A DNA stretch of 64,000 bases. It comes from Dendrobates tinctorius (taxonomy: Eukaryota). Positions 7,351-55,200 of this stretch are shown here, in pieces. The stretch lies in assembly GCF_039654945.1 (NCBI RefSeq), contig NW_027361869.1:8122001-8186000 (forward strand). The letters run 5' to 3'. The translations under genes were made by a program, and so were the position numbers. The notes beneath the pieces were generated by a model, which worked only from the letters and a program-made list of their open reading frames with translations, was not told the origin of the DNA and searched no databases. The stretch's first letter is position 1; every line of letters begins with the position of its first letter.

Positions 7351-10300
7351 TGCCCGGAATAAAAGCCCTTTACCGGCTGACACCGGACAGCAGAGCGCGC
7401 TTCCTCCGCCGCTTCTTCTTCGCCATCTTCTCCACCGACCGTCTGTAGCTGTCACTAGCAGAGACGCCGGGGAAGAGCGGAGAGGAGGTCCCGGGATCAT
7501 CGCCGTCGTCCTCCAGATCTGCACATCGCTGTGTATCCGGGAAGATACATCTGCTGGGGGAACTCGTTCCTCCTGTTCCCGGCTCCTGTCACCATCACAG
7601 GGATCTTTACTACAATGTCTATCGTACAGGACGCTGATTGTACGATGTGGGGACGACCTGGAGCTGCTGAGAGCCCAGAAGGGTAACACAGGCGATGGCT
7701 CCGCTGACTGCCGCCTCCCTGACCTGTGACCTCCCTGTACCCCGTATGTGCGGAGTATTGGGGGTGACAGATGCTCCACATCAGGAGATGATCCACATCG
7801 GCGGCTGATTGCAATGACCTGCTAAAATCTGGTCTCACCCATTGTGGAGCTGTGACCGCTGAGGCCTGTAATGGTGGAAGAGAACTGATAAGGGGCAGCT
7901 TCATAATGCGACTCACTCCCCAACCAGACGCATCTCCGGGGAGAAAACTGTGAGATATTCCTGGATTTATGTGACCCAACTATTGTGCAAAAGGGGAATA
8001 TTGGGAGAAAAGAGGAGACACAAAATGCAATTTCTACACACAGAGCACAGCTGTATAGGGATGAGGTGGTGGCACTGATCATAAAGCTCTGCAGGGATGA
8101 TGTGGTGGCACTGATGATACAGGTGTGCAGGGACGAGGTGGTGGCACTGATCATACAGCTCTGCAGGGACGAGGTGGTGGCACTGATCATACAGCTCTGC
8201 AGGGATGAGGTTGTGGCACTGATCATACAGCTCTGCAGGGATGAGGTTGTGGCACTGATCATACAGCTCTGCGGCGACAAGGTGGTGGTACTGATCATAC
8301 AGCTCTGCAGAGAGGAGGTGGTGGCACTGATCATACAGCTCTGAAGGGAATGTGTGGTGGCACTGATCATAAAGTTCTGCAGTGACGAGTTGGTAGCACT
8401 AATCATACTGCTTTTCAGGGAGGAGGTGGTGGCACTGATCATACAGCTCTGCAGGAATGAGGAGGTGGCACTGATCATACAGCTCTGCGGGGACAAGGTG
8501 GTGACACTGATAATACACCTCTGCGGCGACAAGGTGGTGGCACTGATCATACAGCTCTGCGGGGACAAGGTGTTGGTACTGATCATACAGCTCTGCAAGG
8601 ACCAGGTGGTGGCACTTATCATACAGCTCTGCAGAGAGGAGGTGGTGGCACTGATCATACACCTCTGCGGCGACAAGGTGTTGGTACTGATCATACAGCT
8701 CTGCAAGGACCAGGTGGTGGCACTTATCATACAGCTCTGCAGAGAGGAGGTGGTGGCACTGATCATGCAGCTCTGCTCGGACAATGTGGTGGCACTTATG
8801 TTACAGCTTTGCGGGGACAAGGTGGTGGCAGTGATAATACAGCTCTACAAGGATGAGGTGGTGGTGCTAATCATACAGCTCTGCAGGGAGGAGGTGGTGG
8901 CACTGATCATACAGCTCTACGGGGACAAGATGGTGGCACTGATCATAAAGCTCTGAGGGGATGACGTGGTGGCACTGATCAAATAGCTCTGCAGGGATTC
9001 GGTGGTGGCACTGATCGTACAGCTCTGCAAGGAGTTGGCGGTGGCACTGATCATACAACTTTGCGGCGACAAGGTGGTGGCACTGATCATACAGGTCTGC
9101 AGGTAAAAGGTGGTGGCACTGAACATACAGCTCAGCGCGGACAAGATGGTAGCACTGATCAGACAGCTCTACATGGAGGAGGTTGTGGCACTGAACATAC
9201 TGGTTTGCAGGGATGAGGTAGTGGCACTGATCATACAGCTGTGCCTGGATGAGGTGGTTGCACTGATCATACAGCTCTGCAGGGAAAAGTTGGTGACACT
9301 GATCATACACCTCTGCAGCAACAAGGTGGTGGTACTGATCATACAGCTCTGCGGGGACAAGATGGTGGCACTGATCATAAAGCTCTGCAGGGATGATGTG
9401 GTGGCACTGATCATACAGGTCTGCAGGGATGAGGTGGTAGCACTCATCATACATCTCTGCAGGGACGAGGTGGTGGCACTGGTCAAATAGCTCTGCAGGG
9501 ATTAGGTGGTGGCACTGATCTTACAGCTCTGCAAGGAGTAGGCAGTGGCACTGATCATACAGCTCTGCGGGGACTAGGTGGTGGTACTGATCATACAGCT
9601 CTGTGCTGACCAACTGATGGCACTGATCATACAGCTTTGCGGTGACAATGTGGTGGCACTGATTATACAGTTCTGCGGCGACAACGTGGTAGTACTGATC
9701 ATACAGCTCTGCATGGAAAGGTGGTGGCACTCCACAAGCAGCTCTGCAGGGAAACGGTGGTGGCACTGAACATACAGCTCAGCGCGGACAAGGTGGTGGC
9801 ACTGATCAGACAGCTCTACAGGGAGGAGGTGTTGGCACTGTACATACTTGCTTGCAGGGATGAGGTAGTGGCACTGATCATACACCTCTGCAGGGATGAG
9901 GTGATGGCACTGAAGATACAGCTCTGCAGGGATGAGGTGGTTGCACTGATCATAAGGCTCTGCAGGTACAAGGTTGTGTCACTGATCTTAAAGCTCTGCA
10001 GGGATGAGGTGGTGGCACTGATCATACAGTTCTGCGGGGATCAGGTGGTGGCACTGATCATACAGCTCTGTGTGGATAAGATGGTGGCAATGATAATACA
10101 GCTCTGCAGGGAGGAGTTGGTGGCACTGATCATACAGCTCTGCAAGGATGAGGTGTTGGAACTGATCATACAGCTTTGCGGGGACAATGTGGTTGCACTG
10201 ATTATAAATCTCTTTAGGGATAAGTTGGAGGCACTGATCATGCGGTTCTGCAAGGATGAGGTTGTGGCACTGATCATACAGCTGTGCGGGGACAAGGTGG

Positions 10301-11938: not shown

Positions 11939-12190
11939 CTGATGATATTGGAGACTGCGGACAGACAGTCACTGGCGTTCTGTATTACAGAGGGGTAAGG
12001 TCAGGGGAAGACGTATACAGTTGTGTGTCATCAGCATAAAGATGGTACCGAAAGCCAAATTTGCTGATGGTCTGTCCAATTGGGGCTGTATAGAGAGAGA
12101 AGAGATGGGGGCCAAGGACTGAGCCCTGAGGTACCCAGACAGCAAGAGGAAGAGGAAATGAAGTGGAGCCAGAGAACAAAACACTGAAGA
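11939..12190 (-). mobile_element. L2 LINE internal fragment (RT core), copy 1
   Basis: [40 protein letters not shown]. Confidence 0.9.
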
Positions 12191-12390
12191 ACTCTGCAGG
12201 GACGAGGTGGTGGCACCGATCATACAGGTCAGCAGGGACGAGGTGGTGGCACTCATTATAGAACTCTGCAGGGATGAAGTGGTGGCACTGATCATACAGC
12301 TCTGCGGGGGAGGAGGAGGTGGCACTGATCATACAGGCCAAAAATGGGGGACGGGGTATAGCATGCAGATGGAGAGCACATTGATGCTGG

Positions 12391-12533
12391 AAAGAGCCTT
12401 TGTGTGGCAGTCAGGTGAGCAGGACAGATCTAAGCTCTCTCCCCACGGATCCAGCGGGCTAGCTGGATATCTTTGGGCATGATGGTGACCCTCTTAGCGT
12501 GGATCGCGCACAGATTTGTGTCCTCAAACAGCC
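12391..12533 (-). pseudogene. H3 3'-terminal fragment, copy 1
   Basis: Matches 5055-5197 ([26 protein letters not shown]..., 3'UTR and 5' arm of the stem-loop). Confidence 0.95.
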
Positions 12534-16277: not shown

Positions 16278-16448
16278 AAAAATAACTCAAAGATGGATGG
16301 GAATGAGAAATCCCACAGGATAAAAAAGATGCTACATGAATGATAAAAATAATAACAATGATAATAATAAATGGCACAATTTTTATTTTTTTAAATAAAG
16401 ATGCCTTTATTAAAATATTGACACAACAATTAAGTGCATTAAAAAAAA

Positions 16449-16490
<42 letters not shown>

Positions 16491-16797
16491 GTATACAATC
16501 ACATTAGCCAAAACCAATCCATATCAAAAAGGCTTAATTAATGAACCAGGTACAAAAATGCATATATATAGTGACACAAGGATAATTACATAAAAAGAAA
16601 ATAAATTTATGTATAATGAATGTGCCCAAAGTGCAGAGGTGCAGCTGTGCAAAAAATTCAAATCGCACTAAGGCGTGTGCAACAAAACACAAAGTGTAAA
16701 ATACCTGTAAGCCGATTGACTCTATGTGAGTTGTATAAGAACATGCCCCGACGGGCGTTTCGGAAATAAATCTCCTTCGTCAGGTGGATAGATACGC
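16278..16797 (-). mobile_element. AT-rich Penelope-like pseudo-LTR fragment, copy 1
   Basis: Flanked by CTGCAAGGA duplication; contains (AT)n, AATAAA and a hammerhead core; family assignment inferred from the ribozyme type. Confidence 0.6.
16746..16788 (-). ncRNA. Putative minimal type I hammerhead ribozyme
   Basis: CCAC-CUGACGA-A-GGAGA(UUUA)UUUCC-GAAA-C(GCCC)G-UC-GGGG; core complete, stem I weak. Confidence 0.65.
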
Positions 16798-23157: not shown

Positions 23158-23208
<51 letters not shown>

Positions 23209-23534: not shown

Positions 23535-24470
23535 CTGCAAGGAGTAGGCGGTGGCACTGATCATACAGCTCTGCGGGGACTAGGTGGTGGTAATGATCAT
23601 ACAGCTCTGTGCTGACCAACTGGTGGCACTGATCATACAGCTTTGCGGTGACAATGTGGTGGCACTGATTATACAGTTCGGCGGCGACAGGGTGGTGACA
23701 CTGATCATACAGCTCTGCATGGAAAGGTGGTGGCACTGAACAAACAGCTCTGCAGGGAAAAGGTGGTGGCACTGAACATACAGCTCAGCGCGGACAGGGT
23801 GGTGGCACTGATCAGACAGCTCTACAGGGAGGAGGTGGTGGCACTGAACATACTTGTTTGCCGGGATGAGGTAGTGGCACTGAACATACAGCTCAGCGAG
23901 GACAAGGAGGTGGTACTGATCAGACAGCTCTACAGGGAGGAGGTGGTGGCACTGAACATACTTGTTTACAGGGATGAGGTAGTAGCACTGAACATACAGC
24001 TCTGCAGGGATGAGGTGGTTGCACTGATCATACAGCTCTTTGGGAAGGAGGCGGTGGCACTGATCATAAGGCTCTGCAGGGACCAGGTTGTGTCACTGAT
24101 CTTACAGCTCTGCATGGATGAGGTGGTGGCACTGATCATACAGTTCTGCAGGGAGGAGGTGGTGGCACTGATCATACAGCTTTGCGGGGACAATGTGGTG
24201 GCACTGATTATATATGTCTTTAGGGATAAGTTGGAGGCACTGATCATGCGGTTCTGCAGGGATGAGGTTGTGGCACTGATCATACTGCTCTGCGGGGACA
24301 AGGTGGTGACACTGATCATACACCTCTGCGGCGACAAGGTGGTGGTACTGATCATACAGCTCTGCAGGGAGGAGGTGGTGGCACTGATCACACAGCTCTG
24401 AAGGGAATAGGTGGTGGCACTGATCATACAGCTCTGCAGGGAATAGATGGTGGCACTGATCATAGAGTTC

Positions 24471-24721
24471 TGATGATATTGGAGACTGCGGACAGACTGT
24501 CACTGGCGTTCTGTATTACAGAGGGGTAAGGTCGGGGGAAGACGTATACAGTTGTGTGTCATCAGCATAAAGATGCTACCGAAAGCCAAATTTGCTGATG
24601 GTCTGTCCAATTGGGGCTGTATAGAGCAAGAAGAGATGGGGGCCAAGGACTGAGCCCTGAGGTACCCAGAAAGCAAGAGGAAGAGGAGATGAAGTGGAGC
24701 CAGCGAACAAAACACTGAAGA
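24471..24721 (-). mobile_element. L2 RT-core fragment, copy 2
   Basis: Same 250-bp segment as 11939-12190. Confidence 0.9.
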
Positions 24722-24920
24722 ACTCTGCAGAGACGAGGTGGTGGCACCGATCATACAGGTCAGCAGGGACGAGGTGGTGGCACTCATTATAGAGCTCTGC
24801 AGGGATGAAGTGGTGGCACTGATCATACAGCTCTGCGGGGAGGAGGAGGTGGCACTGATCATACAGGCCAAAATTGGGGTACTGTGTATGGCATGCGGAT
24901 GGAGAGCACATTGATGCTGG

Positions 24921-25079
<159 letters not shown>

Positions 25080-35004: not shown

Positions 35005-35163
<159 letters not shown>

Positions 35164-35487: not shown

Positions 35488-38400
35488 TGTTGTGAGTTCA
35501 TTTTCCCCTTCACTACTGAGGCCCGATGAACTCCCTCTTCTGGTAAAGAAAGGTAGTGAGCCTGATTATCAAACACCTGAGCCTAATGATGATGACTGGC
35601 TGAGTGGAGTTACTGACTGGATATAAGGCCGCCGACGCCCTTCTGCCCTGCGGGTGATTTCTCTGTGGGATCCTTGGAGACCAGTCTGAATTCCTGCTCT
35701 TCTAAAGCTAAGTTTTCTGCTCGGCTTTTTGCATTTGTGCTTTGACTTTGTTTTGCTTTGTTTTTCCGGATTTCTGCCATTCCCTGCTGGGGTGAGCTGA
35801 ATTCCTTTAGCTCTGTCCTCTGAAAATACCTTAGTGCTGATTTAGTTTTTGAAGCCTAGCTGCTTCAGGGTCTTTTTCCATATCAGCTTGTTGGCTTATG
35901 TCTTTGATATGGTTTTGGCAGATTGCAGACAGCAACCTTTCTTTCCTGTTCTGTTTAGTTAGCTTGAGCCCCATTGTTTGCTCAGCCTATCTTTCTATCT
36001 GTGTGAGTGTTTTTTCATCTTGCGTCACCGTCATTATATGTTGGGGGCTGCCTTTTACTTTGGGGTCTGCTCTGGGGCAGTTTAGATTTCCTTTTCTGTC
36101 TTTAGGCTATTTAGCTCTCCGGCTGTGATTGAGGGGTCTAGGGCACCGTAGGAACCCCCCACGGCTACTGCTAGTTGTGTTGATAGGTTCAGGGGTCTGC
36201 AGTCTGATAGTTGCCAACTTCTCTGGTTTTCTGGACGTAGCTTCTATTTTTGTGTCTGCCTCCTACGGTGACTCAATCATAACAGAATCACCCGCCATAC
36301 CGCAGATCCTAGGGTACTCAATAGCAGGAAAGAATTGTAAAAAAAAAAAAAAAAAAGTGTGTATATTTTTTCCTCTATATCTCTGAGGCCGTAGGGGGAT
36401 TTTTTTTTTTTCTCTCAATGGAGATAAAGCAATTGTCTGATCGTGTGGAGCAGCTCGCTGCGGAAGTGCGTGGAATTTCCGCCTACCTTGCTCATTCACA
36501 TGCTGCTGAACCAAAGATTCCTACACCTGATGTATTTTTTGGGGATCGGTCTAAATTTTTGAATTTCAAAAATAATTGTAAATTATTTTTTGCCTTGAAG
36601 CCTAACTCGTCAGGGAGCTCCGCGCAGCAGGTTAAAATTGTCATCTCTTTGCTGCGTGGCGATCCCCAGGATTGGGCGTTTTCTTTGAAACCAGATGATC
36701 CTTTTCTGACTAATGTGAACGCATTTTTTCAAGCCTTGGGGTTGTTGTATGACAAACCTAATGCCATTGATCAGGCTGAAAAGACCCTGCTGGCATTGAA
36801 CCAGGATCGAGATTCTGCAGAATTGTACTGTCAAAAATTCCGAAAATGGGCAGTACTTACTACCTGGAATGATAATGTCTTGGCTGCTCTCTTTCGGAAG
36901 GGGTTGTCAGAAGCCGTAAAAGATACTATGGTGGGATTTCCTGTTCCCTCTGGTCTTGACGATTCTATGTCATTAGCTATTCAGGTTGATCGGCGTTTGC
37001 GCGAACGCAAAACTGCACGAGAGGTGTTGCCACCTGTTGAACAAATGTCTGAACCTATGCAATGTGATAGAGTTTTGTCCAGAGAGCAGCGTCAGGAGTT
37101 CAGAAGGCGTAATAAGTTGTGTTTTTTTTTCTGTGGAGATGCCTCGCATGTTATTTCTGTCTGCCCTAAACGAGAGAAACGCTTTGCACACACGTTTTCT
37201 GTTGGTAGTGTTCAACCTAAGTTTCTTCTGGCTATTACTCTGATCTGCTCCCTGTCCACATTTTCCGCCAAGGCTTTTGTGGATTCGGGAGCAGCCCTAA
37301 ACCTAATGGACTTGGATTTTGCTAAACGTTGTGGATTTCCGATGACACCTCTGCAGACGCCTATCCCTTTGAGGGGGATTGATGCTACTCCTTTGGCTAA
37401 AAATAAACCTCAGTTTTGGACCCAGGTGGTAATGCGGGTCGCCCCAGACCATCAAGAAAATTGCAGATTTTTGGTGTTGCATAATCTGCATGATACTATT
37501 GTTCTGGGGTTTCCCTGGTTACAAATTCATAATCCAGTTTTGGATTGGAAATCTGTGTCTATGGTGAGTTGGGGTTGTCGGTGTGCCTTTAGTGAGGCTC
37601 CGGTGTTTTCCACCTCTCCTCAGTCGCATGATGTTCCTGATTATTTGGCGGACTTTTATGATGTATTTAGTGAGAATGAGTCTGCGTCTCTGCCTCCTCA
37701 TAGGAGTTATGACTGTGCAATTGAACTGAGCCCGGGGTGTAAATTTCCCAAGGGTCGGCTCTTCAATTTATCTGTACCCGAGCATGAGGCTATGCGATCC
37801 TATATTAAGGAGGCGTTGGAGAAGGGTCATATTAGACCATCCTCGTCACCCTTAGGTGCCGGTTTTTTTTTTGTAGCCAAAAAGGATGGATCATTAAGAC
37901 CTTGTATTGATTATCGTGCCCTCAACAAAATTACTGTTAAATATCAGTATCCGTTACCCCTGATTTCTGATCTATTCTCCAGAGTTAAAGGTGCTTGCTG
38001 GTTTACCAAGCTTGACCTCGGGGGGCGTATAATCTTATTCGCATTAAGCATGGGGATGAATGGAAGACGGCGTTTAATACTCCGGAGGGACATTTTGAGT
38101 ACCTGGTGATGCCTTTTGGGCTCACTAATGCCCCTTCTGTCTTCCAGTGCTTCATGAACGATATTTTCCGAGATTTTGTCGATAAATTTTTGATTATCTA
38201 TCTGGATGATATTTTGATCTTCTCCAAGGACTGGGATTCTCATGTGGAACATATTCGGACTGTGTTCCGTATCTTGAGGGAGAATTCCCTGTATGTCAAA
38301 GGATCTAAATGCCTTTTTGGAGTACAGAGGATTTCTTTTTTGGGATTTATTTTGTCCCCGTCAACTATTGAAATGGACCCGGCCAAGGTACAGGCCATTT

Positions 38401-41271
38401 ACGATTGGGTTCAGCCCACTTCTTTGAAGGCCCTCCAGAAGTTTTTGGGTTTTGCTAATTTTTATCGGAAATTTATAGCAAAATTTTCTAGTATTGCCAA
38501 GCCATTGACTGATTTGACTAAGAAGGGTGCTGATGTGTTAAATTGGTCTCCGGAGGCTGTTTCTTCCTTTCAGGAGCTGAAGCGAAGATTCACCTCCGCC
38601 CCGGTTTTGCGGCAACCTGATGTCTCACTTCCGTTCCAGGTAGAGGTGGATGCTTCTGAGATTGGTGCAGGAGCTGTTTTGTCCCAAAAGGATCCTGTAA
38701 CATCTAAAATTAATCCCTGTGCTTTCTTTTCCCGAAAGTTCTCTCCATCTGAACGTAACTATGATGTGGGGAATCGGGAACTGTTGGCCATGAAAGGGGC
38801 ATTTGAGGAGTGGAGACATTGGTTGGAGGGAGCTAAGCATCAAGTCGTGGTCCTCACTGACCACAAGAATTTGATTTACCTAGAGTCGGCTAAGCGCTTG
38901 AGCCCTAGACAGGCTAGGTGGGCTTTGTTTTTTTACACGTTTTGATTTTGTGGTTTCTTTTCTTCCTGGAACTAAGAATGTCAAGGCAGACGCCCTCTCT
39001 AGGAGCTTCTTTGCTGATTCTCCTGTGGTGACCAAGCCTGCTACCATCTTAGGCGAAGGGGTAGTTCTTTCTGCCATCTTGCCCGATTTGAGACGTGCTC
39101 TGGAAGAGTTCCAGGAGGACAAACCTGAGCGTTGTCCCAGTGGAAAGTTGTATGTTCCTGATCAGTGGAAGAAGAGAGTGATGTCTGAAGTTCATTGCTG
39201 TGCTTTGGCTGGTCATCCAGGTATTTTTTTTACTAGACATCTGGTGAGTCGATCTTTTTGGTGGCCCTCCTTGTCTCGTGATGTCAGGAATTTTGTGCAG
39301 TCCTGTGGGACGTGCTCCCGGTCTAAATCGTGTTCTCGCTCTAGTGGGTTGTTGATGCCTTTGCCTGTCCCCAAGAGGCCATGGACCCATATTTCAATGG
39401 ATTTCATCTCTCATATGCCTGTCTCTCAAAGGATGACTGTTATTTGGGTGATTTGTGATAGGTTCTCTAAGATGGTTCATCTTGTACCACTCCCTAAGTT
39501 GCCGTCTTCCTCTGAGTTGGTGCCCCTGTTTTTGCAACAGGTGGTTCGCTTGCAAGGGATTCCTGAGAACATTGTATCTGACAGAGGAGTTCAGTTTGTG
39601 TCTAGATTTTGGAGAACTTTCTGTTCCAAGCTGGGAATTCAGTTGTCCTTCTCCACTGCTTTTCACCATCAGACCAATGGGCAGACAGAGAGAACAAACC
39701 AGACCTTTGAGTCATATTTGAGATGTTTTATTTCTGCTGATCAGGATGATTGGGTTTCATTTTTGCCCTTGGCCAAATTTGCTTTAAATAATGGAGCTAG
39801 TTCTGCCACTTTGATGTCACCTTTTTTTGTAACTTTGGGTTTCATCCTCGATTTTCTTCAGGGCAGGTGGAGCCCTCTGCCTGCCCAGGTGTTGACACTG
39901 TGGTGGAGAGAATGCACCAGGTCTGGGACCAAGTGGTGGATAAGTTATCTCTCTCCCAGGAAAAGGCCCAGCGGTTTTCCAACCGACATAGGACCATTGG
40001 TCCCCAGTTTAAGGTTGGTGATATGGTGTGGTTATCATCAAAAAATATTGCTATGAAGGTGGCTCCTCCTAAGTTTAAGCCTAGATTTATTGGACCTTAC
40101 AAGATTTTGGAGATTATTAATCCGTTCTCTTTTCGTTTGGCTCTTCCTGTCACATTTAAAATCCATAATGTGTTCCATAAATCTTTGTTGAAGAGGTTTG
40201 TTGAACCTGTTGTTCCGGGGGTGGCACCTCCAGACCCTGTATTGGTTGAAGGTAACATGGAATATGAGGTAGAGAAAGTACTGGATTCCCGTCTGGCTAG
40301 ACGGAGACTCCAGTATTTGGTTAAGTGGAAGGGTTATGGTCAGGAGGATAATTCCTGGGTCTCTGCCTCTGATATTCATGCCAAAAGATTGGTGCGTGCC
40401 TTTCATCGGTCTCACCCGGATCGCCCTGGTGGCATGGATGAGGGTTCGGTGACCCCTCCTCAAGGGGGAGGTACTGTTGTGAGTTCATTTTCCCCTTCAC
40501 TACTGAGGCCCGATGAACTCCCTCTTCTGGTAAAGAAAGGTAGTGAGCCTGATTATCAAGCACCTGAGCCTAATGATGATGACTGGCTGAGTGGAGTTAC
40601 TGACTGGATATAAGGCCGCCGACGCCCTTCTGCCCTGCGGGTGAATTCTCTGTGGGATCCTTGGAGACCAGTCTGAATTCCTGCTCTTCTAAAGCTAAGT
40701 TTTCTGCTCGGCTTTTTGCATTTGTGCTTTAACTTTGTTTTGCTTTGTTTTTCTGGATTTCTGCCATTCCCTGCTGGGGTGAGCTGAATTCCTTTAGCTC
40801 TGTCTTCTGAAAATAACTGAGTGCTGATTTAGTTTTTGAAGCCTAGCTGCTTCAGGGTCTTTTTCCATATCAGCTTGTTGGCTTATGTCTTTGATAGGGT
40901 TTTGGCAGATTGCAGACAGCAACCTTTCTTTCCTGTTCTGTTTAGTTAGCTTGGGCCCCATCGTTTGCTCAGCCTATATTTCTATCTGTGTGAGTGTTTT
41001 TTCATCTTGCTTCAGCGTCATTATATGTTGGGGGCTGCCTTTTACTTTGGGGTCTGCTCTGGGGCAGTTTAGATTTCCTTTTCTGTCTTTAGCCTAATTA
41101 GCTCTCCGGCTGTGATCGAGGGGTCTAGGGCACCGTAGGAATCCCCCACGGCTACTGCTAGTTGTGTTGATAGGTTCAGGGGTATTCAATCTGATAGTTG
41201 CCAACTTCTCTTTTTTTCTGGACGTAGCTTCTATTTTTGTGTCTGCCTCCTACGGTGACTCAATCATACCA
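35488..41271 (+). mobile_element. Full-length Ty3/Gypsy chromovirus (sushi/Tf1-like) LTR retrotransposon
   Basis: 797-bp LTRs 35488-36284 and 40475-41271 (TG...CA), GTTGGC target duplication, PPT AAGGGGGAGG at about 40462-40471, gag-pol inside. Confidence 0.97.
36418..40613 (+). pseudogene. Gypsy gag-pol polyprotein, frameshifted
   Basis: Gag CCHC knuckle, protease FVDSGA, RT YLDD, RNase H (VDAS, TDHKNL), integrase (GHPG..CxxC, SMDF, SDRG, GQTER), chromodomain EYEVEKVLD..YLVKWKGY; frameshifts near 38020, 38935 and 39825. Confidence 0.93.
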
Positions 41272-42530
41272 GTTGGCACTGATCATACAGCTCTGCAGGG
41301 AGTAGGTGGTGGCACTGATCATACAGCTCTGCGGGGACAAAGTGGTGGCACTTATGTTACAGCTTTGCGGGGACAAGGTGGTGGCACTGATCATACAGCT
41401 CTGCAGGGAGGAGTTGGTGGCACTGAACATACAGCTCAGCGTGGACAAAGTGGTGGCACTGATCTTAAAGCTCTACAAGGATGAGGTGGTGGTACTAATC
41501 ATACAGCTCTGCAGGGAGGAGGTGGTGGCACTGATCATACAGCTCTGCGGGGACAAGATGGAGGCACTGATGATAAGGCTCTGCAGGGATGATGTGGTGG
41601 CACTGATCGTACAGGTCTGCAGGGATGAGGTGGTAGCACTCATCATACAGCTTTGCGTGGACAAGGTGGTGGCACTGATCATATAGCTCTGAGGGGATGA
41701 CGTGGTGGCACTGATCAAATAGCTCTGCAGGGATTAGGTGGTGGCACTGATCATACAGCTCTGCAAGGAGTAGGCGGTGGCACTGATTCAACAGCTGTGC
41801 GAGGAGTAGGCAGTGGTACTGATCATACAGCTCTGTGCTGACCAACTGGTGGCACTGTTCATGCGGTGACAAGGTGGTAGCACTGATTATACAGTTCTGC
41901 GGCGACAAGGTGGGGGCACTGATCATACATGTCTGCAGGGAAAAGGTGGTGGCACTGAACATACAGATCAGCGCGGACAAGGTGGTGGCACTGATCAGAC
42001 AGCTCTACAGGGAGGAGGTTGTGGCACTAAACTGGTTTGCAGGGATGAGGTAGTGGCACTGATTATACAGCTCTGCAGTGAGAGGTGGTGGCACTGAAGA
42101 TACAGCTGTGCAGGGATGAGGTGGTTGCACTGATCATACAGCTCTGCAGGGAGTAGGCGGTGGCACTGATCATACAGCTCTGCGGGGACTTGGTGGTGGT
42201 ACTGATCATACAGCTCTGTGCTGACCAACTGGTGGCACTGATCATACAACTTTGTGGTGACAAGGTGGTGGCACTGATTATACAGTTCTGCGGCTACAAG
42301 GTGGTGGCACTGATCATACAGGTCTGCAGGGATGAGTTGGTGGCACTGATCATGTAGCCCTGAGGGGATGACGTGGTGGCACTGATCAAATAGCTCTGCA
42401 GGGATTAGGTGGTGGCACTGATCTTACAGCTTTGCGGGGACAATGTGATGGCACTGATTATATATCTCTTTAGGGATAAGTTGGAGGCACTGATCATGCG
42501 GTTCTGCAGGGATGAGGTTGTGGCACTGAT

Positions 42531-45500
42531 AATGATAATAATAATAATAATAATACAAAATTTTATTTTTATAGCGCCGACATATTCCGCAGCACTTTAC
42601 ATTTCAAAGGGGATTTGTACAGACAATAGACATTACAGCATAACAGTAATCACATACAGTAGATTATAACAAATACCAAGAGGAAAGAGGGCCCTGCTCG
42701 CAAGTTTACAGTCTATGAGGAAAGAGGTAGACACGAAAGGTGGGTGGTAACAGTTGCCCTGATTGTAGGAACCAGCCATACTGTTAGGTATGTGACAGTA
42801 CGGACACAGAGGGCTAATGGATGCATAAAACATGTGAGAACATGATGCGGGAAAACTGCTTATGGTAAAACTTTTGGCTGTGCCACACGGGGATAGATTA
42901 GGTTAATGTGTTGAGGCGATAGACCAGTCTGAATAAATGCGTTTTCAGGGCACGCTTAAAATTGTGGGGATTGGGGACTAATCGTATTGACCTGGGAAGT
43001 GCATTCCAAAGAATTGGCGCTGCACGTGTAAAGTCATGGAGACGGGAGTGGGAGGTTCTGACTATTGAGGATGCTAACCTCAGGTCATCAGCAGAACGGA
43101 GGGCGCGGGTAGGGTGGTATACTGAAACAAGGGAGGAGATGTAGGGTGGTGCTGAGCCATGGAAGGCTTTGTGGGTGAGGGTAAAAGGTTTATACTGAAT
43201 TCTGGAGTGGATGGGTAGCCAGTGTAATGACTGGCACAAGGTAGAGGCATCGGTGTAACGATTGGTGAGGAATATAATCCTGGCTGCAGCATTCAAGACA
43301 GATTGGAGGGGGGAGAGTTTGGTAAGAGGGAGACTGATTAGAAGAGAGTTACAATAGTCGAGAGGAGAATGAATAAGGGAAACAGTAAGAGCTTTTGCAG
43401 AGTCAAAAGTAAGAAAAGGTCGAATTCTAGAAATGTTTTTGAGGTGCAGATGACAAGAGCGAGCCAGTGATCGAATGTAGGGGGCAAAGGAAAGCTCGGA
43501 ATCAAGTATGACCCCAAGACAGCGGGCCTTTTACTGGGGAGTAATAGTGGAACCACACACAGAAATAGCAATGTTGGGTATAGGTACATTAGTAGAGGGA
43601 GGAAACATCAGGAGTTCAGTCTTTGACAGGTTCAGTTTCAGATATAGTGAGGACATGATATTAGACACAGTGTTTAGACAATCGCCGGTGTTTTCTAGAA
43701 AGGCTGGCGTGATGTCAGGAGAAGAAGCGTATAATTGGGTGTCATCAGCATAGAGATGGTACTGGAAACCAAATCTACTGATTGTTTGACCAATAGGGGC
43801 AGTGTACAAGGAGAAGAGGAGAGGGCCTAGAACCGATCCTTGGGGGACCCCAACAGTAAGGGGAAGGTGAGAGGAGGAGGAACCGGCAAAAGATACAGTA
43901 AAGGAGCAGTCAGAGAGATAGGAGGAGAACCAGGAGAGAACGGTGTCCTTGAGGCCAATGGAACGGAGCATAGTGAGGAGGAGCTGATGATCCACAGTGT
44001 CGAATGCTGCAGAGAGATCCAAGAGAATTAGCATGGAGTAATGACCATTTGATTTAGCTGTTAGCAGATCATTATAGACTTTAGTGAGGGCAGTTTCAGT
44101 GGAGTGTACAGAACGGAAATCGGATTGGAGAGGGTCGAGAACAGAGTTTTCTGAGAGATAGCGGATAAGACGGGAGTGGATCAGGCGTTCCAGGAGTTTA
44201 GAGATGAAGGGAAGATTAGAGACAGGTCTATAGTTAGCGGCACAGTTTTGGTCGAGGGATGGTGTTTTAAGTAGTGGATGTTTGATGGCAAACTTAAATG
44301 TGGAGGGAAAAATACCTGAAGAGAGAGGTTAAATAGTTTAGTTAGGTGAGGGGTGACAGCAGGGGAAAGGGACTGGAGGAGATGTGACGGAAATGGGTCA
44401 CTGGTGCAAGTAGTTGGGCGAGAAGATGCAAGGAGCCTGCTTACTTCTTCTTCTGTGACTGGTTCAAAATCAGAGAGTGAGCTAGATGCAGTGGGGGAGG
44501 GAGGACAGTGCATGGTATGAGGTGATTGGGAGATAATTTCCTGTCGGATCTGGTCAATTTTTTCTTTGAAGTAATTGGCCAGATCGTCAGCTCGGAGCTC
44601 CGAGGTTGGGGCCTGTACTCTTGGGTTGAGAAGAGAATGAAAAGTGTCAAAGAGACGTTTCGAGTTATTGGACAGTGAGGTGATGAGGGTGTTGAAATAG
44701 GTTTGTTTGGAGAGGTGAAGGGCAGTGTTGTATGTTCAAAGCATAAACTTATAATGGATGAAATCTTCGTGTAGATTGGATTTTCTCCACAGACGTTCGG
44801 CGCACCTGGAGCACCGCTGCAGGAAACGTGTTTGGGAAACGTGTTTGCACCGTGTGCCAGGGTTGTCGCCGTCTGTGTTGTGGTGTTCTAGTTATAAGGG
44901 GTGCAAATTCATCCAGGGCACTTTGAAGTGTTTCATTGTAATGCTTCAATGCAGAATCAGGGCATGAGAGGGAGGAGATAGGGGCCAATGAAGACTGCAA
45001 GTTCTTCGTAAGTTTCTGGGTGTTAATGGCCTGTATGTTTCTATAAGTCTGGACAGTGGGGGTGACCTGAGCAGCCTGGCAGTTCTTGATAGAGAATGAA
45101 AGAAGATTGTGGTCAGAGAGCGGGAGAGGGGAGTTTGCAAAATCATCCACTGCACAAAGCCGAGAGAAGACCAAGTCGAGGGAGTTTCCGACTTCATGCG
45201 TTGGAGAATTAGTAAGCTGCGAAAGGCCAAATGAGGAGGTTAGAGATAAAAGGTGAGCAGCAGATGGTGAGAGGGGAAGAGCAATGGGAATGTTGAAATC
45301 TCCCATGATGAGGGTAGGGATGTCACAGGAGAGAAAATGTGGAAGCCAAGTGGCAAAATGATCCAGGAACTGATGGGAGGGGCCGGGAGGACGATACACC
45401 ACCGCCACTCGCATGGAGAAGGGGGTGTAGGGTCTGACGGCATGGACCTCAAAAGAAGGGAAGACAAGTGAGGGTACTTGAGGGATAACCTGAAAGGTAC

Positions 45501-46233
45501 ATTTTGGTGATAGGAGCAGACCAACGCCTCCACCTGCTCTACTGTCTGATCTTGGGGTATGAGAGAAGTGTAGCCCCCCGTATGAAAGAGCAGCAGCAGC
45601 GGTAGTGTCTGACTGCTGGATCCAGGTTTCAGTAAGAGCCAGAAGGTTAAGAGAATTAGAAAGGAAGAAGTCATGGATGAAGGAGAGTTTGTTACAAACT
45701 AAGCGAGAATTCCAAAGTGCACAATTAAGAGAGACAGATGGCATGCAGGGAATATTAATAAGATTAGAGGGGTTTCTAAGTGTAGCAGTTGGGGGGTTTG
45801 ACTTTCTATAACATGGGGGACCAAGGTTGGGAGCAATGTCTCCTGCGACTAGGAGAAGGAGGATAGAAAGAGTGAGCAGATTGTTAAGTGATTTGTGAGA
45901 GCGTCTCTGATGTTGAATGGTGGGACTGACTGGATCTGTGCAATTTAACAATGTGAAAAGAGCGTGAGTGCTATACATAGGAGAGGAAAGGAGCGAGGGG
46001 CCGATATGGATGGAGTGTAGAGAGTTAATGCAAGGGCGGTGGATGTGTGTGAATGCAGCGGCCAGGATATAAATTATACAAATGCTTATGGTATATATTT
46101 GATGTGCTCCAAATGTACAGGGAGTAGATGTATATAAATGTCTTACCTGTCTCCTGCCCTGTCTAACTGCCATGCTATAACTGACAGTAGTACTTTGATT
46201 CATGTACTTCGATTACATGTGCATAAATGCCAC
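42531..46233 (-). mobile_element. L2-clade LINE with near-complete, degraded ORF2
   Basis: APE endonuclease motifs (LALTETW, YRPP, MGDFN, LDLVF, SDH), RT motifs ([25 protein letters not shown]), 3' tail GTGCTGCGGAATATGTCGGCGCTAT + (ATT)n; CACTGAT repeated at both junctions. Confidence 0.92.
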
Positions 46234-49200
46234 CACTGATCATACAACTCTGCGGGGACAGGGTGGTGGTACTGATAATACAGCTCTGCAGGGAGGAGGT
46301 GGTGGTGCTGAACATACAGCTCTGCAGGGAAAAGGTGGTGGCACTGAACATACAGCTCAGCGTGGACAAGGTGGTGGTACTAATCAGACAGCTCTACAGG
46401 GAGGAGGTGGTGGCACTGAACATACTTGTTTGCAGTGATGAGGTAGTGGCACTGATCATACAGCTCTGCAGGGATGAGGTGGTGGCACTGAAGATACAGC
46501 TCTGCAGTGATGAGGTGGTTGCACTGATCATACAGCTCTGTGGGGAGGAGGCGGTGGCACTGATCATAAGGCTCTGCAGGGACAAGGTTGTGTCACTGAT
46601 CTTACAGCTCTGTAGGGATGAGGTGGTGGCACTGATCATACAGTTCTGCGGGGAGGAAGTGGTGGCACTGATCATACAGCTCTTCAGGGAGGAGGTGGTG
46701 GCACTGATCATACAGCTCTTCAGGAATGAGGTAGTGGCACAGATCATACAGCTCTGCAGAGAGGAGGTGGTGGCACTGATTATACAGCTTTGCAGGGATG
46801 AGGTAGTGGCACAGATCCTACAGACCTGCAGGGACAAGGTGGTGGCACTGATCATACAGCTCTGCAGTGACAAGGTGGTGACACTGATCATACACCTCTG
46901 CGGCGATAAGGTGGTGGTACTGATCATACAGCTCTGCAAGGACCAGGTGGTGGCACTGATCATACAGCTTTGCGGGGACAATGTGTTTGCACTGATTATA
47001 CATCTCTTAAGGTATAAGTTGGAGGCACTGATCATGCGGTTCTTCAGGGATGAGGTTGTGGCACTGATCATACAGCTCTGCAGGGATGAGGTAGTGGCAC
47101 AGATCATACAGCTCTTCAGGAATGAGGTAGTGGCACAGATCATACAGCTCTGCAGAGAGGAGGTGGTGGCACTGATTAAACAGCTTTGCAGGGATGAGGT
47201 AGTGGCACAGATCCTACAGACCTGCAGGGACAAGGTGGTGGCACTGATCATACAGCTCTGCAGGGACAAGGTGGTGACACTGATCATACACCTCTGCGGC
47301 GATAAGGTGGTGGTACTGATCATACAGCTCTGCAAGGACCAGGTGGTGGCACTAATCAAACAGCTCTGCAGAGACGAGGTGGTGGCACTGATTATACAGC
47401 TCTGCAGGGAGGAGATGGTGGCACTGATCATACAGCTCTGCAGGAAGTAGGAGGTGGCACTGATTATACAGCTCTGTGTGGATAAGATGGTGGCACTGAT
47501 CATACAGCTCTGCAGGGAGGAGTTGGTGGCACAGATCACACAGCTCTGCAGGGACGAGGAGGTGGCACTGATCATGCAGCTCTATAGGTAAGAGGTGATG
47601 TCACTGATCATACTGCTCTGCAGGGAAGAGGTGGTGACACTGATCAAACAGCTCTGCAAGGACGAGGTGTTGGCACTGATCATACAGCTTTTCGGGGACA
47701 AAGTGGTTGCACTGATTATACATCTCTTAAGGTATAAGTTGGAGGCACTGATCATGCGGTTCTTCAGGGATGAGGTTGTGGCACTGATCATACAGCTCTT
47801 TAGGGATGAGGTAGTGGCACAGATCATACAGCTCTGCAGAGAGGAGGTGGTGGCACTGATTATACAGCTTTGCAGGTAGGAGATGGTGGCACTGATCATA
47901 AAGCTCTGCAGGGAGTAGGTGGTGGCACTGATCATACAGCTCTGCGGGGAGAATTTGATTGCACTGATCATACAGCTCTGCGGGGAGAATTTGATTGCAC
48001 TGATCGTACAGCTCTGCTCGGACAAAGTGGTGGCACTTATTATACAGCTTTGTGGGGACAAGGTGGTGGCACTGATCATACAGCTCTGCAGTGGCTAGGT
48101 TGTGGCACTGATCATGCAGTTCTGCAGGGATGAGGTAGTGGCACAGATCATATAGCTCTGTAGGGATGAGGTAGTGGCACAGATCATACAGCTTTGCAGG
48201 GAGGAGATCGTGGTACTGATCATAAAACTTTGCAGGGAGTAGGTGGTGGCACTGATCATACAGCTCTGCGGGGACAATTTGATGGCACTGATCATACAGC
48301 TCTGCTCGGACAAAGTGGTGGCACTTATGATACAGCTTTGTGGGGACAAGGTGGTGGCACTGATCATACAGCTCTGCAGTGACTAGGTTGTGGCACTGAT
48401 CATGCAGTTCTGCAGGGATGAGGTGGTGGCACTGATCATACAGCTCTGCAGGGAAAATTTGGTGACACTGATCATACACCTCTGCGTCGACAAGGTGGTG
48501 GTACTGATCATACAGCTGTGCAAGGACCAGGTGGTGGCACTGATCATAAAGCTCTGCAGAGAGGAGGTGGTGGCACTGATTATACAGCTTTGCAGAGAGG
48601 AGATGGTGGCACTGATCTGTGGGGACAATTTGATGGCACTGATCAAACAGCTCTGCTCAGACAAAGTGGTGGCACTTATGATACAGCTTTGCGGGGACAA
48701 GGTGGTGGCACTGAACATATAGCTCAGCGTGGACAAGGTGGTGGCTCTGATCTTAAAGCTCCACAAGGATGAGGTGTAGGTACTAATCATACTGCTCTGC
48801 AGGGAGGAGGTGGTGGCACTGATCATACAGCTCTGCGGGGACAAGATGGTGGCACTGAACATGAAGATCTGCAGGGATGATGTGGTGGCACTGATGATAC
48901 AGTTCTGCAGAGATGAGGTGGTAGCACTCCTCATACAGCTTTGCAGGGACGAGGTGGTGGCACTGATCATACAGCTTTTCATGGACAAGGTGGTGGCACT
49001 GATCAAACAGCTCTGCAAGGACGAGGTGTTGGCACTGATCATACAGCTTTGCGGGGACAATGTGGTTGCACTGTTTCTACATCTCTTTAGGTATAAGTTG
49101 GATGCACTGATCAGGGATGATGTTGTGGCACTTATCATACAGCTCTGCAGGGATGAGGTAGTGGCACAGATCATACAGCTCTGCAGAGAGGAGGTGGTGG

Positions 49201-52200: not shown

Positions 52201-55200
52201 ACAGCTCTGTGGAGACAAGGTGGTGGCACTGATAATACACCTCTGCGGCGACAACGTGGTGGTACTGATCATACAGCTCTGCAGAGAGGAGGTGGTGACA
52301 CTGATCATACAGCTCTGAAGGGAATAGGTGGTGGCACTGATGATACAGCTCTGTAGGGATGAGGTGGTTGCACTGATCATACAGCTCTATGGGGAGGAGG
52401 CGGTGGCACTGATCATAAGGCTCTGTAGGGACAAGGTTGTGTCACTGATCTTACAGCTCTGCAGGGAGTAGGTGGTGGCATTGATCATTCAGCTCTGTAG
52501 GGAAGAGGTGGTGACACTGATCATAAAGCTCTGCAGGGATGAGGTAGTGGCACAGATCACACAGTGCTGCAAGGACCAGGTGGTGGCACTGATCATACAG
52601 CTATGCAGGGACGAGGAGGTGGCACTGATCATACAGCTCTGCGGGGACAAGGTGGTGACACTGATAATACACCTCTGAGGCGACAAGGCACTGATCATAC
52701 AGCTCTGCAGGGACAAGGTGGTGGTACTGATCATACAGCTCTGCAGAGAGGAGGTGGTGGCACTGATCATACAGCTCTGAAGGGAATATGTGGTGGCACT
52801 GATCATAAAGTTCTGCAGTGACGAGGTGGTGGCACTAATCATACTGCTTTGCAGGGAGGAGGTGGTGGCACTGATCATACAGCTCAGCAGGGAGGACGTG
52901 GTGGCACTGATTATACAGCTCAGCAGGGACAAGGTGGTGGCACTGATCATACAGCTTTGCGGGGATAATGTGGTTGCACTGATTATACATCTCTTTAGGG
53001 ATAAGTTGGAGGCACTGATCATGCAGTTCTGCAGGGATGAGATAGTGGCTCAGATCATACAGCTCTGCAGGGACGAGGAGGTGGCACTGATCATACACCT
53101 CTGCGGCCACAAGGTGGTGGTACTAATCATACAGCTCTGCAGTGACGAGGTCGTGGCACTGATTATGCAGTTCTGCAGGGATGATGTAGTGGCACCGATC
53201 ATACAGCTCTGCAGGGATGATTCAGTAGAACAGATCATACAGCCCTGTAGGGATGAGGTGATGGCACTGATCATACAGCTCTGCAGGGAAAAGTTGGTGA
53301 CACTGATCATACAGCTCTGCTCGCACAAAGTGGTGGCACTTATGATACAGCTTTGTGGGGACAAGGTGGTGGCACTGATCATGCAGTTCTGCAGGGATGA
53401 GGTAGTGACACCGATCATACAGCTCTGCAGGTATGATTCAGTAGCACAGATCATACAGCCTGCAGGGATGAGGTGGTGGCACTGATCATACACCTCTGCG
53501 GCGACAAGGTGGTGTTACTGATCATACAGCTCTGCAAGGACCAGGTGGTGGCACTAATCATACAGCTCTGCAGAGACAAGGTGGTGGCACTGATTATACA
53601 GCTCTGCAGGGAGGAGGTTGTCGCACTGAACATACTGGTTTGCAGGGATGTGGTGGTGGCACAGATCATACAGCTCTGCAGAGAGGAGGTGGTGGCACTG
53701 ATTATACAGATTTGCAGGGAGGAGATGGTGGCACTGATCATACAGCTCTGCAGGGAGTAGGTGGTGGCACTGATAATAGAGCTCTCCCGGGATAATTTGA
53801 TGGCACTGATCATACAGCTCTGCTCGGACAAAGTGGTGGCACTTATGATACAGCTTTGTGGGGACAAGATGTTGGCACTGATCATACAGCTCTGCAGTGA
53901 TGAGGTTGTGGCACTGATCATGCAGTTCTGCAGGGATGAGGTAGTGGCACCGATCATACAGCTCTGCAGGGATGTTTCAGTAGCACAGATCATACAGCCC
54001 TGCAGGGATGAGGTGGTGGCACTGATCATACAGCTCTTCAGGGAAAAGTTGGTGACGCTGATCATACACCTCTGCGGCGACAAGGTGGTGGCACTGATTA
54101 TACAGTTCTGCGGCGACAAGGTGGTGGCACTGATCACACAGGTCTGCAGGGAAAAGGTGGTGTTATTGAACATACAGCTCAGCGCGGACAAGGTGGTGGC
54201 ACTGATCAGACAGCTCTACAGGGAGGAGGTTGTGGCACTAAACATACTGGTTTGCAGGGATGAGGTTGTGGCACTGATCATACAGCTCTGCAGGGAGGAG
54301 GTGGTGGCACTGATCATACAGCTCTGCAGGGAATAGGTGGTGGCACTGATCGTACAGCTCTGCTGGGACAAGATGGTGGTACTGATCATAAAGCTCTGCA
54401 GGGATGATGTAGTGGCACTGATCATACAGGTCTGCAGAGACGAGGTGGTGGCACTGATCATACAACTTTTCGTGGACAAGGTGGTGGCACTGATCAGACA
54501 GCTTTGCGTGTACAAGGTGGTGGCACTAATCAGGTAGCCCTGAGGGGATGACGTGGTGGCACTGATCAAAAAGCTCTGCAGGGATTAGGTGGTGGCACTG
54601 ATCATACAGCTCTGCAAGGAGTAGGTGGTGGCACTGATCATACAGCTTGCGTTGACAATGTGGTGGCACTGATTATACAGTTCTGCGGCGAAAAGGTGGT
54701 GGCACTGATCATACAGCTCTGCATGTAAAGGTGGTGGCACTGAACATACAGCTCTGCAGGGAAAAGGTGGTGGCACTGAACATACAGGTCAGCAGGGACG
54801 AGGTGGTGGCACTCATTATAGAACTCTGCAGGGGTGAAGTGGTGGCACTGATCATACAGGCCAAAAATGGGGGACGGGGTATGGAGTATGGCATGCGGAT
54901 GGAGAGCACATTGATGCTGGAACCAGCGCGTCGCCTATCACGCTCCCCCATCAGTACATAGGTTTTCATCTGTGCTTTTTTTTTTTTTTAGTAATTACAG
55001 AAAAGCAGGAGGATTTGTGGTTTATTGGCTTAATTAATTTTCTTCTGTTACATAATATTTGTTCAGTGAACCTGCGGATAATTACACTACACTAATGTGG
55101 GGTTAACCCTCTGTGTAGCTCTAGGACTTTTCACCAATGATGGCAATTAGCTCGATCTGCACGTGCCGCAATCTCCTCAGTCACTTACAGTATTATCGGG

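What the first reader, a model, noticed from the sequence alone, without database searches (positions are those of the whole stretch)
8047..54860. A 47-kb satellite built from the histone pre-mRNA 3'-processing signal (roughly 900 U7 snRNA binding sites)
Seen: on the minus strand the unit reads TCAGTGCC-ACCACC-TCATCCCTG-CAGAGCTGT-ATGA. This aligns with the real histone 3' ends in this window: H1 TCAGAGCC-ACCACC-CTGTCCCCG-CAGAGCTGT and H2B AAGAGCC-ACCACC-CCATCTCCAT-CAGAGCTGT. Established: replication-dependent histone mRNAs are cut about 5 nt after the stem-loop by U7 snRNP, whose 5' end (vertebrate ...GUUACAGCUCUUU...) pairs with the HDE. AGAGCTGTA in a consensus unit is a perfect 9-nt complement of UACAGCUCU. 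Each unit therefore holds the 3' stem arm, the cleavage region and a correctly spaced HDE, but lacks the 5' arm, so it has no SLBP site. Inference: a minus-strand transcript would be a highly multivalent U7 snRNP ligand located inside the histone locus. It could act as a sponge, a histone-locus-body nucleator, or a substrate cut into ~36-nt-phased pieces. I do not recall a satellite described as derived from the HDE.
Basis: partly seen in the sequence, partly recalled or inferred. Interest (0 to 1): 0.95.

Follow-up and report, generated by a model that had tools for sequence, protein, structure and literature searches.

The report
Satellite grown from histone H1's 3'-end signal
A 36-base repeat that fills the 47-kb gap between two histone gene clusters was copied from the RNA-cutting signal at the end of the histone H1 gene. 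Many copies still carry a docking motif for U7 snRNA, but they decay like ordinary junk repeats and nothing here shows that they do anything.

Summary
Window 8047-54860 holds a one-orientation 36-bp satellite of 911 recognisable units (32.8 kb), interrupted by 13.8 kb of transposons and gene-cluster relics.

On the minus strand the consensus matches the H1 3' signal at 32 of 36 positions. It covers the 3' stem arm, the ACCACC cleavage region and the HDE. A 14-unit array (5977-6488) starts in exact register at the real H1 stem-loop, so the origin from the H1 3' signal is well supported.

AGAGCUGUA is a perfect 9-nt complement of the human and mouse U7 5' end. "About 900 U7 sites" is overstated, though. 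Only 37% of units keep that 9-mer, the share expected from independent column decay, and 48% keep an H1-grade predicted duplex.

The array is uniformly old, has no higher-order repeat and tolerates transposon insertions.

The RNA evidence is contigs only, carries no strand and is ambiguous. The best reading is a neutral satellite seeded by the H1 3' signal. A U7-related role remains possible but unsupported.

This scan found and followed up the same satellite on other DNA of this genome, with the same conclusion. I found no published description of a satellite derived from the HDE.

The parts
8047..54860 (-). Span of the 36-bp satellite: 911 units, 32.8 kb of satellite, HDE-sense on the minus strand. 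Interrupted by the insertions listed below.
   Evidence: TRF; 8-mer density in one orientation only; wrap-around alignment and column profile
6453..6501 (-). Genuine H1 3' processing signal: stem-loop GGCTCTTTTCAGAGCC, then ACCACC, then the HDE CAGAGCTGTATGA. Its last 36 nt (6488-6453) are unit 0 of the repeat.
   Evidence: Rfam Histone3, 35.9 bits; sequence; register table
5977..6488 (-). 14-unit array running on in exact register from the H1 3' signal. All 14 units keep columns 25-36 (HDE plus ATGA).
6524..7141 (-). Histone H1 coding sequence (205 aa), 0.9 kb downstream of the big array on the minus strand.
63312..63823 (-). The same 14-unit H1-3' array in the next copy of the macro-repeat.
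55960..56358 (-). Histone H2A gene. It is transcribed towards the array, so read-through would give HDE-sense satellite RNA. Its stem-loop lies at about 55911-55926.
55021..55026 (-). The only AATAAA on the minus strand between the H2A 3' end and the array. It is a possible polyadenylation stop for read-through.
57076..57116 (+). H2B 3' signal (stem-loop, ACCACC, CCATCTCCAT, CAGAGCTGT) with no satellite beside it. It shows that the ACCACC...CAGAGCTGT layout is the normal histone signal of this genome.
35493..41282 (+). Ty3/gypsy-type LTR retrotransposon inserted in the array (gag, protease, RT, RNase H, integrase, chromodomain). Its frames are broken and its 799-bp LTRs are 97.1% identical.
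29487..30253 (+). Solo LTR of the same element, inside a 1.4-kb block that duplicates 34844-36285 at 97.8% identity.
42530..46239 (-). Degenerate LINE (endonuclease and reverse transcriptase) inserted in the array.
24859..25079 (-). Cluster relic: 147 bp of the H3 C-terminal coding sequence and 3' UTR (95.9% identical to 62386-62532), fused to the array's own right-hand flank (54876-54922). Further copies lie at 12329-12548, 28937-29157 and 34943-35163.
24460..24750 (-). LINE reverse-transcriptase fragment that travels with the relic. Copies lie at 11966-12219, 28574-28864 and 34544-34834.
16298..16790 (-). AT-rich inserted element of about 500 bp with an (AT)n run and a sub-threshold hammerhead-like motif. 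Copies lie at 23015-23527 and 32705-33216. It is not part of the 36-bp unit.

Best explanation
The 36-bp satellite was born by tandem duplication of the last 36 nt of the histone H1 3' processing signal: the 3' arm of the stem, the ACCACC cleavage region and the U7-binding HDE. It then spread by unequal exchange and segmental duplication through the spacer between tandemly repeated histone quintets. It now makes up most of a 57.3-kb macro-repeat.

Shown: the origin, the orientation, the copy number and the pattern of decay.

Inferred: the array evolves essentially neutrally. It is an old, unhomogenised spacer filler that accumulates transposons and swallowed remnants of gene clusters.

About 40-50% of units still carry an H1-grade HDE by inheritance. 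A minus-strand RNA, for example H2A read-through, could therefore pair with U7 snRNP. Such pairing would be a by-product and not a maintained function.
For: 1. Register. The real H1 stem-loop (Rfam Histone3) runs without a break into 14 units, and H1's own unit matches the big-array consensus at 32/36.
2. The H2B gene has the same ACCACC-N10-CAGAGCTGT layout with no satellite beside it, so the layout is the ancestral histone signal and not a satellite feature.
3. The big and small arrays have the same orientation. Four internal relics join satellite, an H3 3' fragment and the array flank, showing that arrays merged when gene clusters collapsed.
4. Neutral decay. HDE columns are 89.5% conserved against 90.6% for the rest (Mann-Whitney p=0.73 for HDE higher). 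Intact AGAGCTGTA occurs in 37.0% of units against 36.3% expected from independent columns. The least conserved columns are 16/17 and 22, with variants typical of CpG decay (C/T at 16 and 22, G/A at 17).
5. Units are uniformly 86-88% identical to the consensus in every segment, and there is no higher-order repeat.
6. An LTR element with LTRs 2.9% diverged, a solo LTR and a LINE sit inside the array.
7. The flanking gene blocks are 99.94% identical between macro-repeat copies. Homogenisation or selection acts on the genes, not on the units within the array.
Against: - In the 14-unit array next to H1, columns 25-36 are invariant while 8 of the other 24 columns vary. My hypergeometric estimate is p about 0.024. 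The variants are few and shared, so this is only a weak hint of constraint close to the gene.
- RNA-labelled runs of a related species (X1) hold satellite words at depths above those of the H1 gene body, which could mean transcription.
- Column conservation within one concerted-evolution array is a blunt test of selection. A function that needs only many approximate sites would not show up in it.
Confidence: 0.7

Rival explanations
1. U7 scaffold or sponge. HDE-sense read-through transcripts of the array act as a multivalent ligand that concentrates or titrates U7 snRNP at the histone locus, for example by helping to tether the U7-containing spheres (histone locus bodies) of amphibian oocytes.
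For: - The unit has a perfect 9-bp complement to the vertebrate U7 5' end. Its predicted duplex is -14.0 kcal/mol, equal to the real H1 HDE. 48% of units are at or below -12, against a shuffled mean of -6.7.
- The HDE-sense RNA folds less stably than most shuffles (z=+1.5), so the sites would be accessible.
- H2A points into the array in the right sense.
- Amphibian oocyte spheres contain U7 snRNP and sit at histone loci (PMC12046345).
- The related-species RNA-labelled run X1 holds satellite words.
Against: - HDE columns show no excess conservation, and intact sites occur at the rate of independent decay.
- An AATAAA lies between H2A and the array.
- An RNA run of the best-holding species shows no satellite (X22), and a run of another species shows it at under 1% of H1 depth (X14).
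- X1 also covers the H1 promoter and spacer, as DNA carry-over would.
- In human cells, lincRNAs rich in HDE-like motifs did not change U7 level or histone processing when overexpressed (PMC11417402).
Confidence: 0.12
2. Fail-safe cleavage and termination zone. Polymerases that escape 3' processing at H2A (big array) or at H1 (14-unit array) meet repeated HDEs. U7 snRNP cuts at one of them without SLBP, and transcription stops before it reaches the next promoter.
For: - Layout on the minus strand: H2A, then the array, then 0.9 kb, then the H1 promoter; and H1, then 14 units, then H3.
- The 14 units next to H1 all keep an intact HDE.
- From established knowledge (my memory, not tested here): U7 snRNP measures the cut site from the HDE duplex, and substrates with strong HDEs are less dependent on SLBP.
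Against: - A few units would be enough. 900 decaying units with transposons inside them are not what a maintained terminator looks like.
- No conservation signal in the big array.
- No evidence of phased ends; read laying listed no places where many molecules begin or end (section 6).
Confidence: 0.08
3. Resemblance without descent. An unrelated satellite invaded the H1 3' flank, and the H1 HDE is really satellite sequence.
For: The direction of copying cannot be read from one genome alone.
Against: - H2B, which has no satellite beside it, has the same ACCACC-N10-CAGAGCTGT signal.
- The unit boundary falls inside the H1 stem-loop, whose 5' arm is unique sequence.
- The HDE core is fixed by U7 complementarity across vertebrates.
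Confidence: 0.03
4. The array encodes a repetitive protein. The unit is 12 codons long and there are open frames of up to 407 aa.
For: Long ORFs on both strands. There is a nominal Pfam MgtE_N score on one of them.
Against: - The Pfam score has no significant matched stretch, which is a repeat-bias artefact.
- Column variability shows no 3-base periodicity.
- Both strands are open simply because the consensus lacks stop codons.
Confidence: 0.01

Closest known systems
Newt (Notophthalmus viridescens) histone clusters separated by long tracts of satellite DNA. Stephenson, Erba & Gall 1981 and Diaz et al. 1981 are recalled from memory. Gall et al. 1981 is cited in PMC2114352 and PMC7151628.
   Same: Compact histone gene clusters alternate with tens of kb of a one-family satellite in an amphibian. 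In the newt the satellite is transcribed on lampbrush loops by read-through from histone genes, and the locus carries U7-containing spheres.
   Different: The newt satellite has a unit of about 220 bp with no reported relation to the histone 3' signal. Here the unit is 36 bp and is a copy of the H1 stem arm plus HDE. Transcription is not shown here.
HDE-like motifs in human LTR12 repeats and LTR12-derived lincRNAs (Plewka et al. 2024, PMC11417402)
   Same: Thousands of repeated genomic copies of a motif complementary to the U7 snRNA 5' end, lying outside histone pre-mRNAs.
   Different: The LTR12 motif is 15 nt, is not derived from a histone gene, is dispersed in a retroviral LTR and is more conserved than the rest of the LTR. 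There U7 represses transcription and a sponge role was tested and rejected. Here the motif is 9 nt, histone-derived, tandem, inside the histone locus and not preferentially conserved.
Satellites and spacer repeats derived from parts of tandem gene families. Examples are the 5S rDNA-derived PcP190 satellite of frogs and the promoter-derived 60/81-bp spacer repeats of Xenopus rDNA (recalled from memory, not checked here).
   Same: A short functional segment of a tandemly repeated gene is amplified into an array in or beside the gene family's spacer.
   Different: The source here is an RNA 3'-processing signal of a Pol II gene. I found no published example of that.
Genuine histone pre-mRNA 3' processing signal (Rfam RF00032 plus the HDE)
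   Same: Cleavage-region sequence, HDE core and the spacing between them are those of the H1 gene.
   Different: The 5' arm and the loop are missing, so there is no SLBP site and no Rfam match.

Membership tests
Satellite DNA | Long head-to-tail arrays of one unit in a single orientation | tested here: met
   911 units, 96% of them exactly 36 bp, all in one orientation
Histone 3' UTR stem-loop (RF00032, SLBP site) | 6-bp stem with a 4-nt loop and its flanks | tested here: not met
   Only the real H4, H1 and H3 ends reach the gathering score. There is no Histone3 hit in 8.6 kb (240 units) at E<=10.
Histone downstream element (U7 snRNA binding site) | Purine-rich core complementary to the U7 5' end | tested here: met
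   AGAGCUGUA pairs with UACAGCUCU of human and mouse U7. The duplex is -14.0 kcal/mol, the same as the real H1 HDE. Only 37% of units are intact. The species' own U7 was not available, so mammalian U7 served as a proxy.
Histone downstream element (U7 snRNA binding site) | Fixed spacing downstream of the cleavage region | tested here: met
   CCACC-to-AGAGCTGT spacing is 10 or 13 nt (the two overlapping CCACC of ACCACC) in 401 of 418 cases, as in H1
Histone downstream element (U7 snRNA binding site) | Binds U7 snRNP and directs cleavage in RNA | not testable with these tools
   Needs CLIP or in vitro processing. The RNA contigs carried no strand and no phased ends.
Newt-type histone-cluster/satellite macro-repeat | Gene quintets separated by tens of kb of satellite, repeated in tandem | tested here: met
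   Gene order is H4, H3, H1, then 46.8 kb of array, then H2A, H2B, H4, H3, H1. The period is 57.3 kb and the gene blocks are 99.94% identical.
Newt-type histone-cluster/satellite macro-repeat | Satellite transcribed by read-through from histone genes | tested here: inconclusive
   X1 (RNA-labelled, related species) holds satellite but also promoter and spacer. X22 holds none and X14 under 1% of H1 depth. The contigs carry no strand.

The most novel reading that the evidence does not exclude
In oocytes or early embryos, H2A read-through produces long HDE-sense satellite RNA. Its hundreds of accessible U7 sites per array, over many arrays in a locus of 1 Mb or more, would tether or concentrate U7 snRNP. 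This would help to build the histone locus body (sphere) at this locus, or serve as a U7-dependent fail-safe cleavage zone. It would be the first satellite whose unit is an RNA-processing signal with a role in nuclear-body formation.
Probability: 0.12. Interest if true: 0.85.

Novelty: new variant of a known kind. Interest (0 to 1): 0.5.

Why it matters
The register with the H1 gene shows exactly which 36 nt seeded a satellite that now dominates a histone locus. This is a rare case where a satellite's birth can be read base by base, and the source is an RNA-processing signal, not a gene body or a promoter.

It also gives a concrete, testable handle on an old observation: amphibian histone loci carry U7-containing spheres and, in newts, transcribe their spacer satellites. 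If the satellite RNA exists in the HDE sense, it is a ready-made multivalent U7 ligand at the right place. If it does not, the array is a clean example of a functional motif amplified and then left to decay.

Tried and rejected
- A fuzzy-regex unit search timed out. I replaced it with wrap-around dynamic programming.
- Higher-order repeat search: mean unit identity stays between 0.78 and 0.80 at every lag from 1 to 60, with no periodic peak.
- Coding hypothesis: rejected (no codon periodicity).
- Stem-loop mimic in units: rejected. HDE-sense RNA folds worse than most shuffles.
- The hammerhead motif noted by another reader scores 19.2 bits against a gathering score of 34, has broken helix-I pairs, and lies in an inserted 500-bp element, not in the unit.
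- The bacterial promoter/terminator scan is irrelevant to an animal locus and I ignored it. It merely re-found the H2A stem-loop.
- Literature searches for an HDE- or histone-3'-end-derived satellite, and for bufonid satellite or histone work, found nothing.
- The species' own U7 could not be obtained. None lies in the window and no eukaryotic genome collection is searchable.
Full report
**What is there**

The window is one and a bit copies of a 57.3-kb histone macro-repeat. The gene order is:
- H4 (+, 1648-1959)
- H3 (-, 5094-5504)
- H1 (-, 6524-7141)
- a 46.8-kb satellite span (8047-54860)
- H2A (-, 55960-56358)
- H2B (+, partly N-masked and left alone)
- then H4, H3 and the H1 3' region again

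The two copies of the gene block are 99.94% identical over 6,665 bp.

TRF reports 36-bp arrays across the span, plus two 14-unit arrays at 5977-6488 and 63312-63823. Every satellite 8-mer lies in the same orientation.

A wrap-around alignment to the cyclic consensus gives 911 units with at least 24/36 identity, and 875 of them are exactly 36 bp. These units cover 32.8 kb. The remaining 13.8 kb of the span is inserted material.

**Origin**

On the minus strand the H1 mRNA ends in a canonical stem-loop (Rfam Histone3, 35.9 bits, 6455-6501). After it come ACCACC, CTGTCCCCG and CAGAGCTGTATGA.

The 36 nt that start in the loop and 3' arm (TCAGAGCC..., 6488-6453) are followed, without a single base of offset, by 13 more units. 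This gene-proximal unit matches the big-array consensus TCAGTGCCACCACCTCGTCCCTGCAGAGCTGTATGA at 32 of 36 positions.

H2B has no satellite next to it, yet it has the same ACCACC, 10 nt, CAGAGCTGT layout. That layout is therefore the normal histone 3' signal of this genome, and the satellite is its derivative, not the reverse.

Inside the big array there are four copies of a relic. Each is 147 bp of the H3 C-terminal coding sequence and 3' UTR (95.9% identical to the live gene). The match breaks off at the stem-loop and is fused to the 47-62 bp that flank the array on its H2A side. Satellite lies on both sides of each relic. This relic is what remains when a gene cluster between an H1-side array and the next big array is deleted. 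It shows that arrays have merged by cluster collapse and then grown by multi-kb segmental duplication.

**U7 complementarity**

Human and mouse U7 begin ...GUGUUACAGCUCUUUUAG (PMC7026596), and the unit's AGAGCUGUA is a perfect 9-nt complement of that 5' end.

RNAduplex against that 5' end gives these energies:
- consensus unit: -14.0 kcal/mol
- real H1 signal: -14.0 kcal/mol
- the other four real histone signals: -10.6 to -18.2 kcal/mol
- shuffled units: mean -6.7 kcal/mol

The species' own U7 was not available, so this is a proxy.

No unit has an SLBP-type stem-loop. Four near-consensus units fold less stably than 189 of 200 shuffles, so the sites would be accessible in an RNA.

**Is the HDE maintained?**

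- The nine HDE columns average 89.5% conservation. The other non-CpG columns average 90.6% (Mann-Whitney p=0.73 for HDE higher).
- Base by base, the G and T positions of the HDE are if anything less conserved than G and T elsewhere.
- Intact AGAGCTGTA occurs in 337 of 911 units (37.0%). The product of the column frequencies predicts 36.3%, so there is no co-conservation.
- The least conserved columns are 16/17 and 22. Their variants (C/T at 16 and 22, G/A at 17) look like CpG decay.
- 48% of units keep a duplex of -12 kcal/mol or better.

"About 900 U7 sites" should therefore read roughly 340-440.

**Age and dynamics**

- Units are 86-88% identical to the consensus in every segment of the array.
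- Mean pairwise identity stays between 0.78 and 0.80 at all lags from 1 to 60, with no periodic peak, so there is no higher-order repeat and no local homogenisation.
- The array holds a Ty3/gypsy-type LTR element with broken frames and LTRs 97.1% identical. It also holds a solo LTR of the same family, a degenerate LINE, LINE fragments, and three copies of a 500-bp AT-rich element.

This is the picture of an old, tolerated spacer satellite.

One small counter-hint comes from the 14-unit array beside H1. There, columns 25-36 are invariant while 8 of the other 24 columns vary. My hypergeometric estimate is p about 0.024. The variants are few and shared between units, so I treat this as weak.

**Transcription**

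On the minus strand H2A points into the array, so read-through would be HDE-sense. A single AATAAA lies in between, at 55026.

Only assembled contigs without strand were available:
- X1, an RNA-labelled run of a related species, has an H1 about 94% identical. It holds satellite words at depths up to about 5,700, against about 800-1,100 for most of the H1 gene body. It also holds the H1 promoter and spacer (7008-7761, depth 144) and sequence beyond the small array, which is what DNA carry-over from a multi-copy locus would look like.
- X14, from a third species, holds H1 at thousands of depth and satellite at under 1% of that.
- X22, an RNA run of the species that holds the window best, has one H1 contig and no satellite.
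- No phased ends were listed.

The result is inconclusive and does not support abundant satellite RNA in those samples.

**Comparison with what is known**

The arrangement of gene quintets separated by tens of kb of satellite in an amphibian is the classical newt histone locus. Gall and colleagues showed read-through transcription of that satellite on lampbrush loops, and the locus carries U7-containing spheres, now called histone locus bodies. The papers are recalled from memory. The citations and the U7 and sphere statements appear in PMC2114352, PMC7151628 and PMC12046345. The newt unit is about 220 bp and has no reported relation to the HDE.

Repeated U7-complementary motifs outside histone genes are known in human LTR12 elements. 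There U7 represses transcription, and a sponge role was tested and not found (PMC11417402).

I found no paper describing a satellite derived from a histone 3' signal.

**Earlier scan notes**

The same satellite was noted and followed up on other pieces of this genome (s1-362205, s1-362200, s1-362219). Those follow-ups reached the same conclusion, and one names the species as a cane toad, which I did not verify.

Notes on this window about the H1 mini-array (s1-376883), the H3-relic and border copies (s1-377360) and the 57-kb macro-repeat (s1-377361) agree with my own tests. The hammerhead note (s1-377177) is only a sub-threshold match in an inserted element.

**Verdict**

The origin from the H1 3' signal is well supported (about 0.9). 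Neutral spacer satellite is the best reading (0.7 overall). U7 scaffold, sponge or fail-safe roles are possible (about 0.2 together) but unsupported.

Noticed in passing
window 12329-12548, 24859-25079, 28937-29157, 34943-35163: Four copies of a relic inside the array. Each is an H3 C-terminal coding sequence plus 3' UTR (147 bp, 95.9% identical to the live H3) that breaks off at the stem-loop and is fused to the array's own H2A-side flank. It is a footprint of a collapsed gene cluster, later copied by segmental duplication.
   Followed up: yes
window 16298-16790, 23015-23527, 32705-33216: An AT-rich element of about 500 bp with an (AT)n run is inserted three times. Its minus strand starts with a hammerhead type I-like motif (CUGACGA...GAAAC). 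The one copy scanned (16200-16900) scores only 19.2 bits against a gathering score of 34, with unpaired helix-I positions. It may be a decayed retrozyme-like element.
   Followed up: partly
window 35493-41282 and 29487-30253: A Ty3/gypsy-type LTR retrotransposon with broken reading frames and 799-bp LTRs 97.1% identical, plus a solo LTR of the same family inside a 1.4-kb duplicated block (97.8% identical). These give a minimum age for this part of the array.
   Followed up: partly
window 1-6665 vs 57334-64000: The gene blocks of neighbouring macro-repeat copies differ by 2 substitutions and 1 gap in 6.7 kb, while satellite units are only about 79% identical to each other. This means either very recent duplication of whole 57-kb units or strong homogenisation of the gene part.
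   Followed up: partly
window 5984-6488: In the 14-unit array beside H1, the HDE plus ATGA columns (25-36) are invariant in all 14 units, while 8 of the other 24 columns vary. The units fall into a few recurring variant types differing mainly at columns 2-5, 9, 15-17, 21 and 24, two of which alternate in the distal part of the array.
   Followed up: partly
window 54976-55026 (minus strand): AATAAA is followed about 30 nt later by an encoded A14 run between H2A and the array. It looks like the tail of a retroposed element and could polyadenylate H2A read-through.
   Followed up: no
window 55911-55926 and 57076-57091: The H2A and H2B stem-loops have the loop TCTA (GGCTCTTCTAAGAGCC) and fall below Rfam's gathering score, unlike H4, H3 and H1, whose loop is TTTC.
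   Followed up: no
window 52621-52718: A short stretch where the unit has a 30-bp period (TRF). An earlier scan note reports a 30-bp variant array elsewhere in the locus.
   Followed up: no
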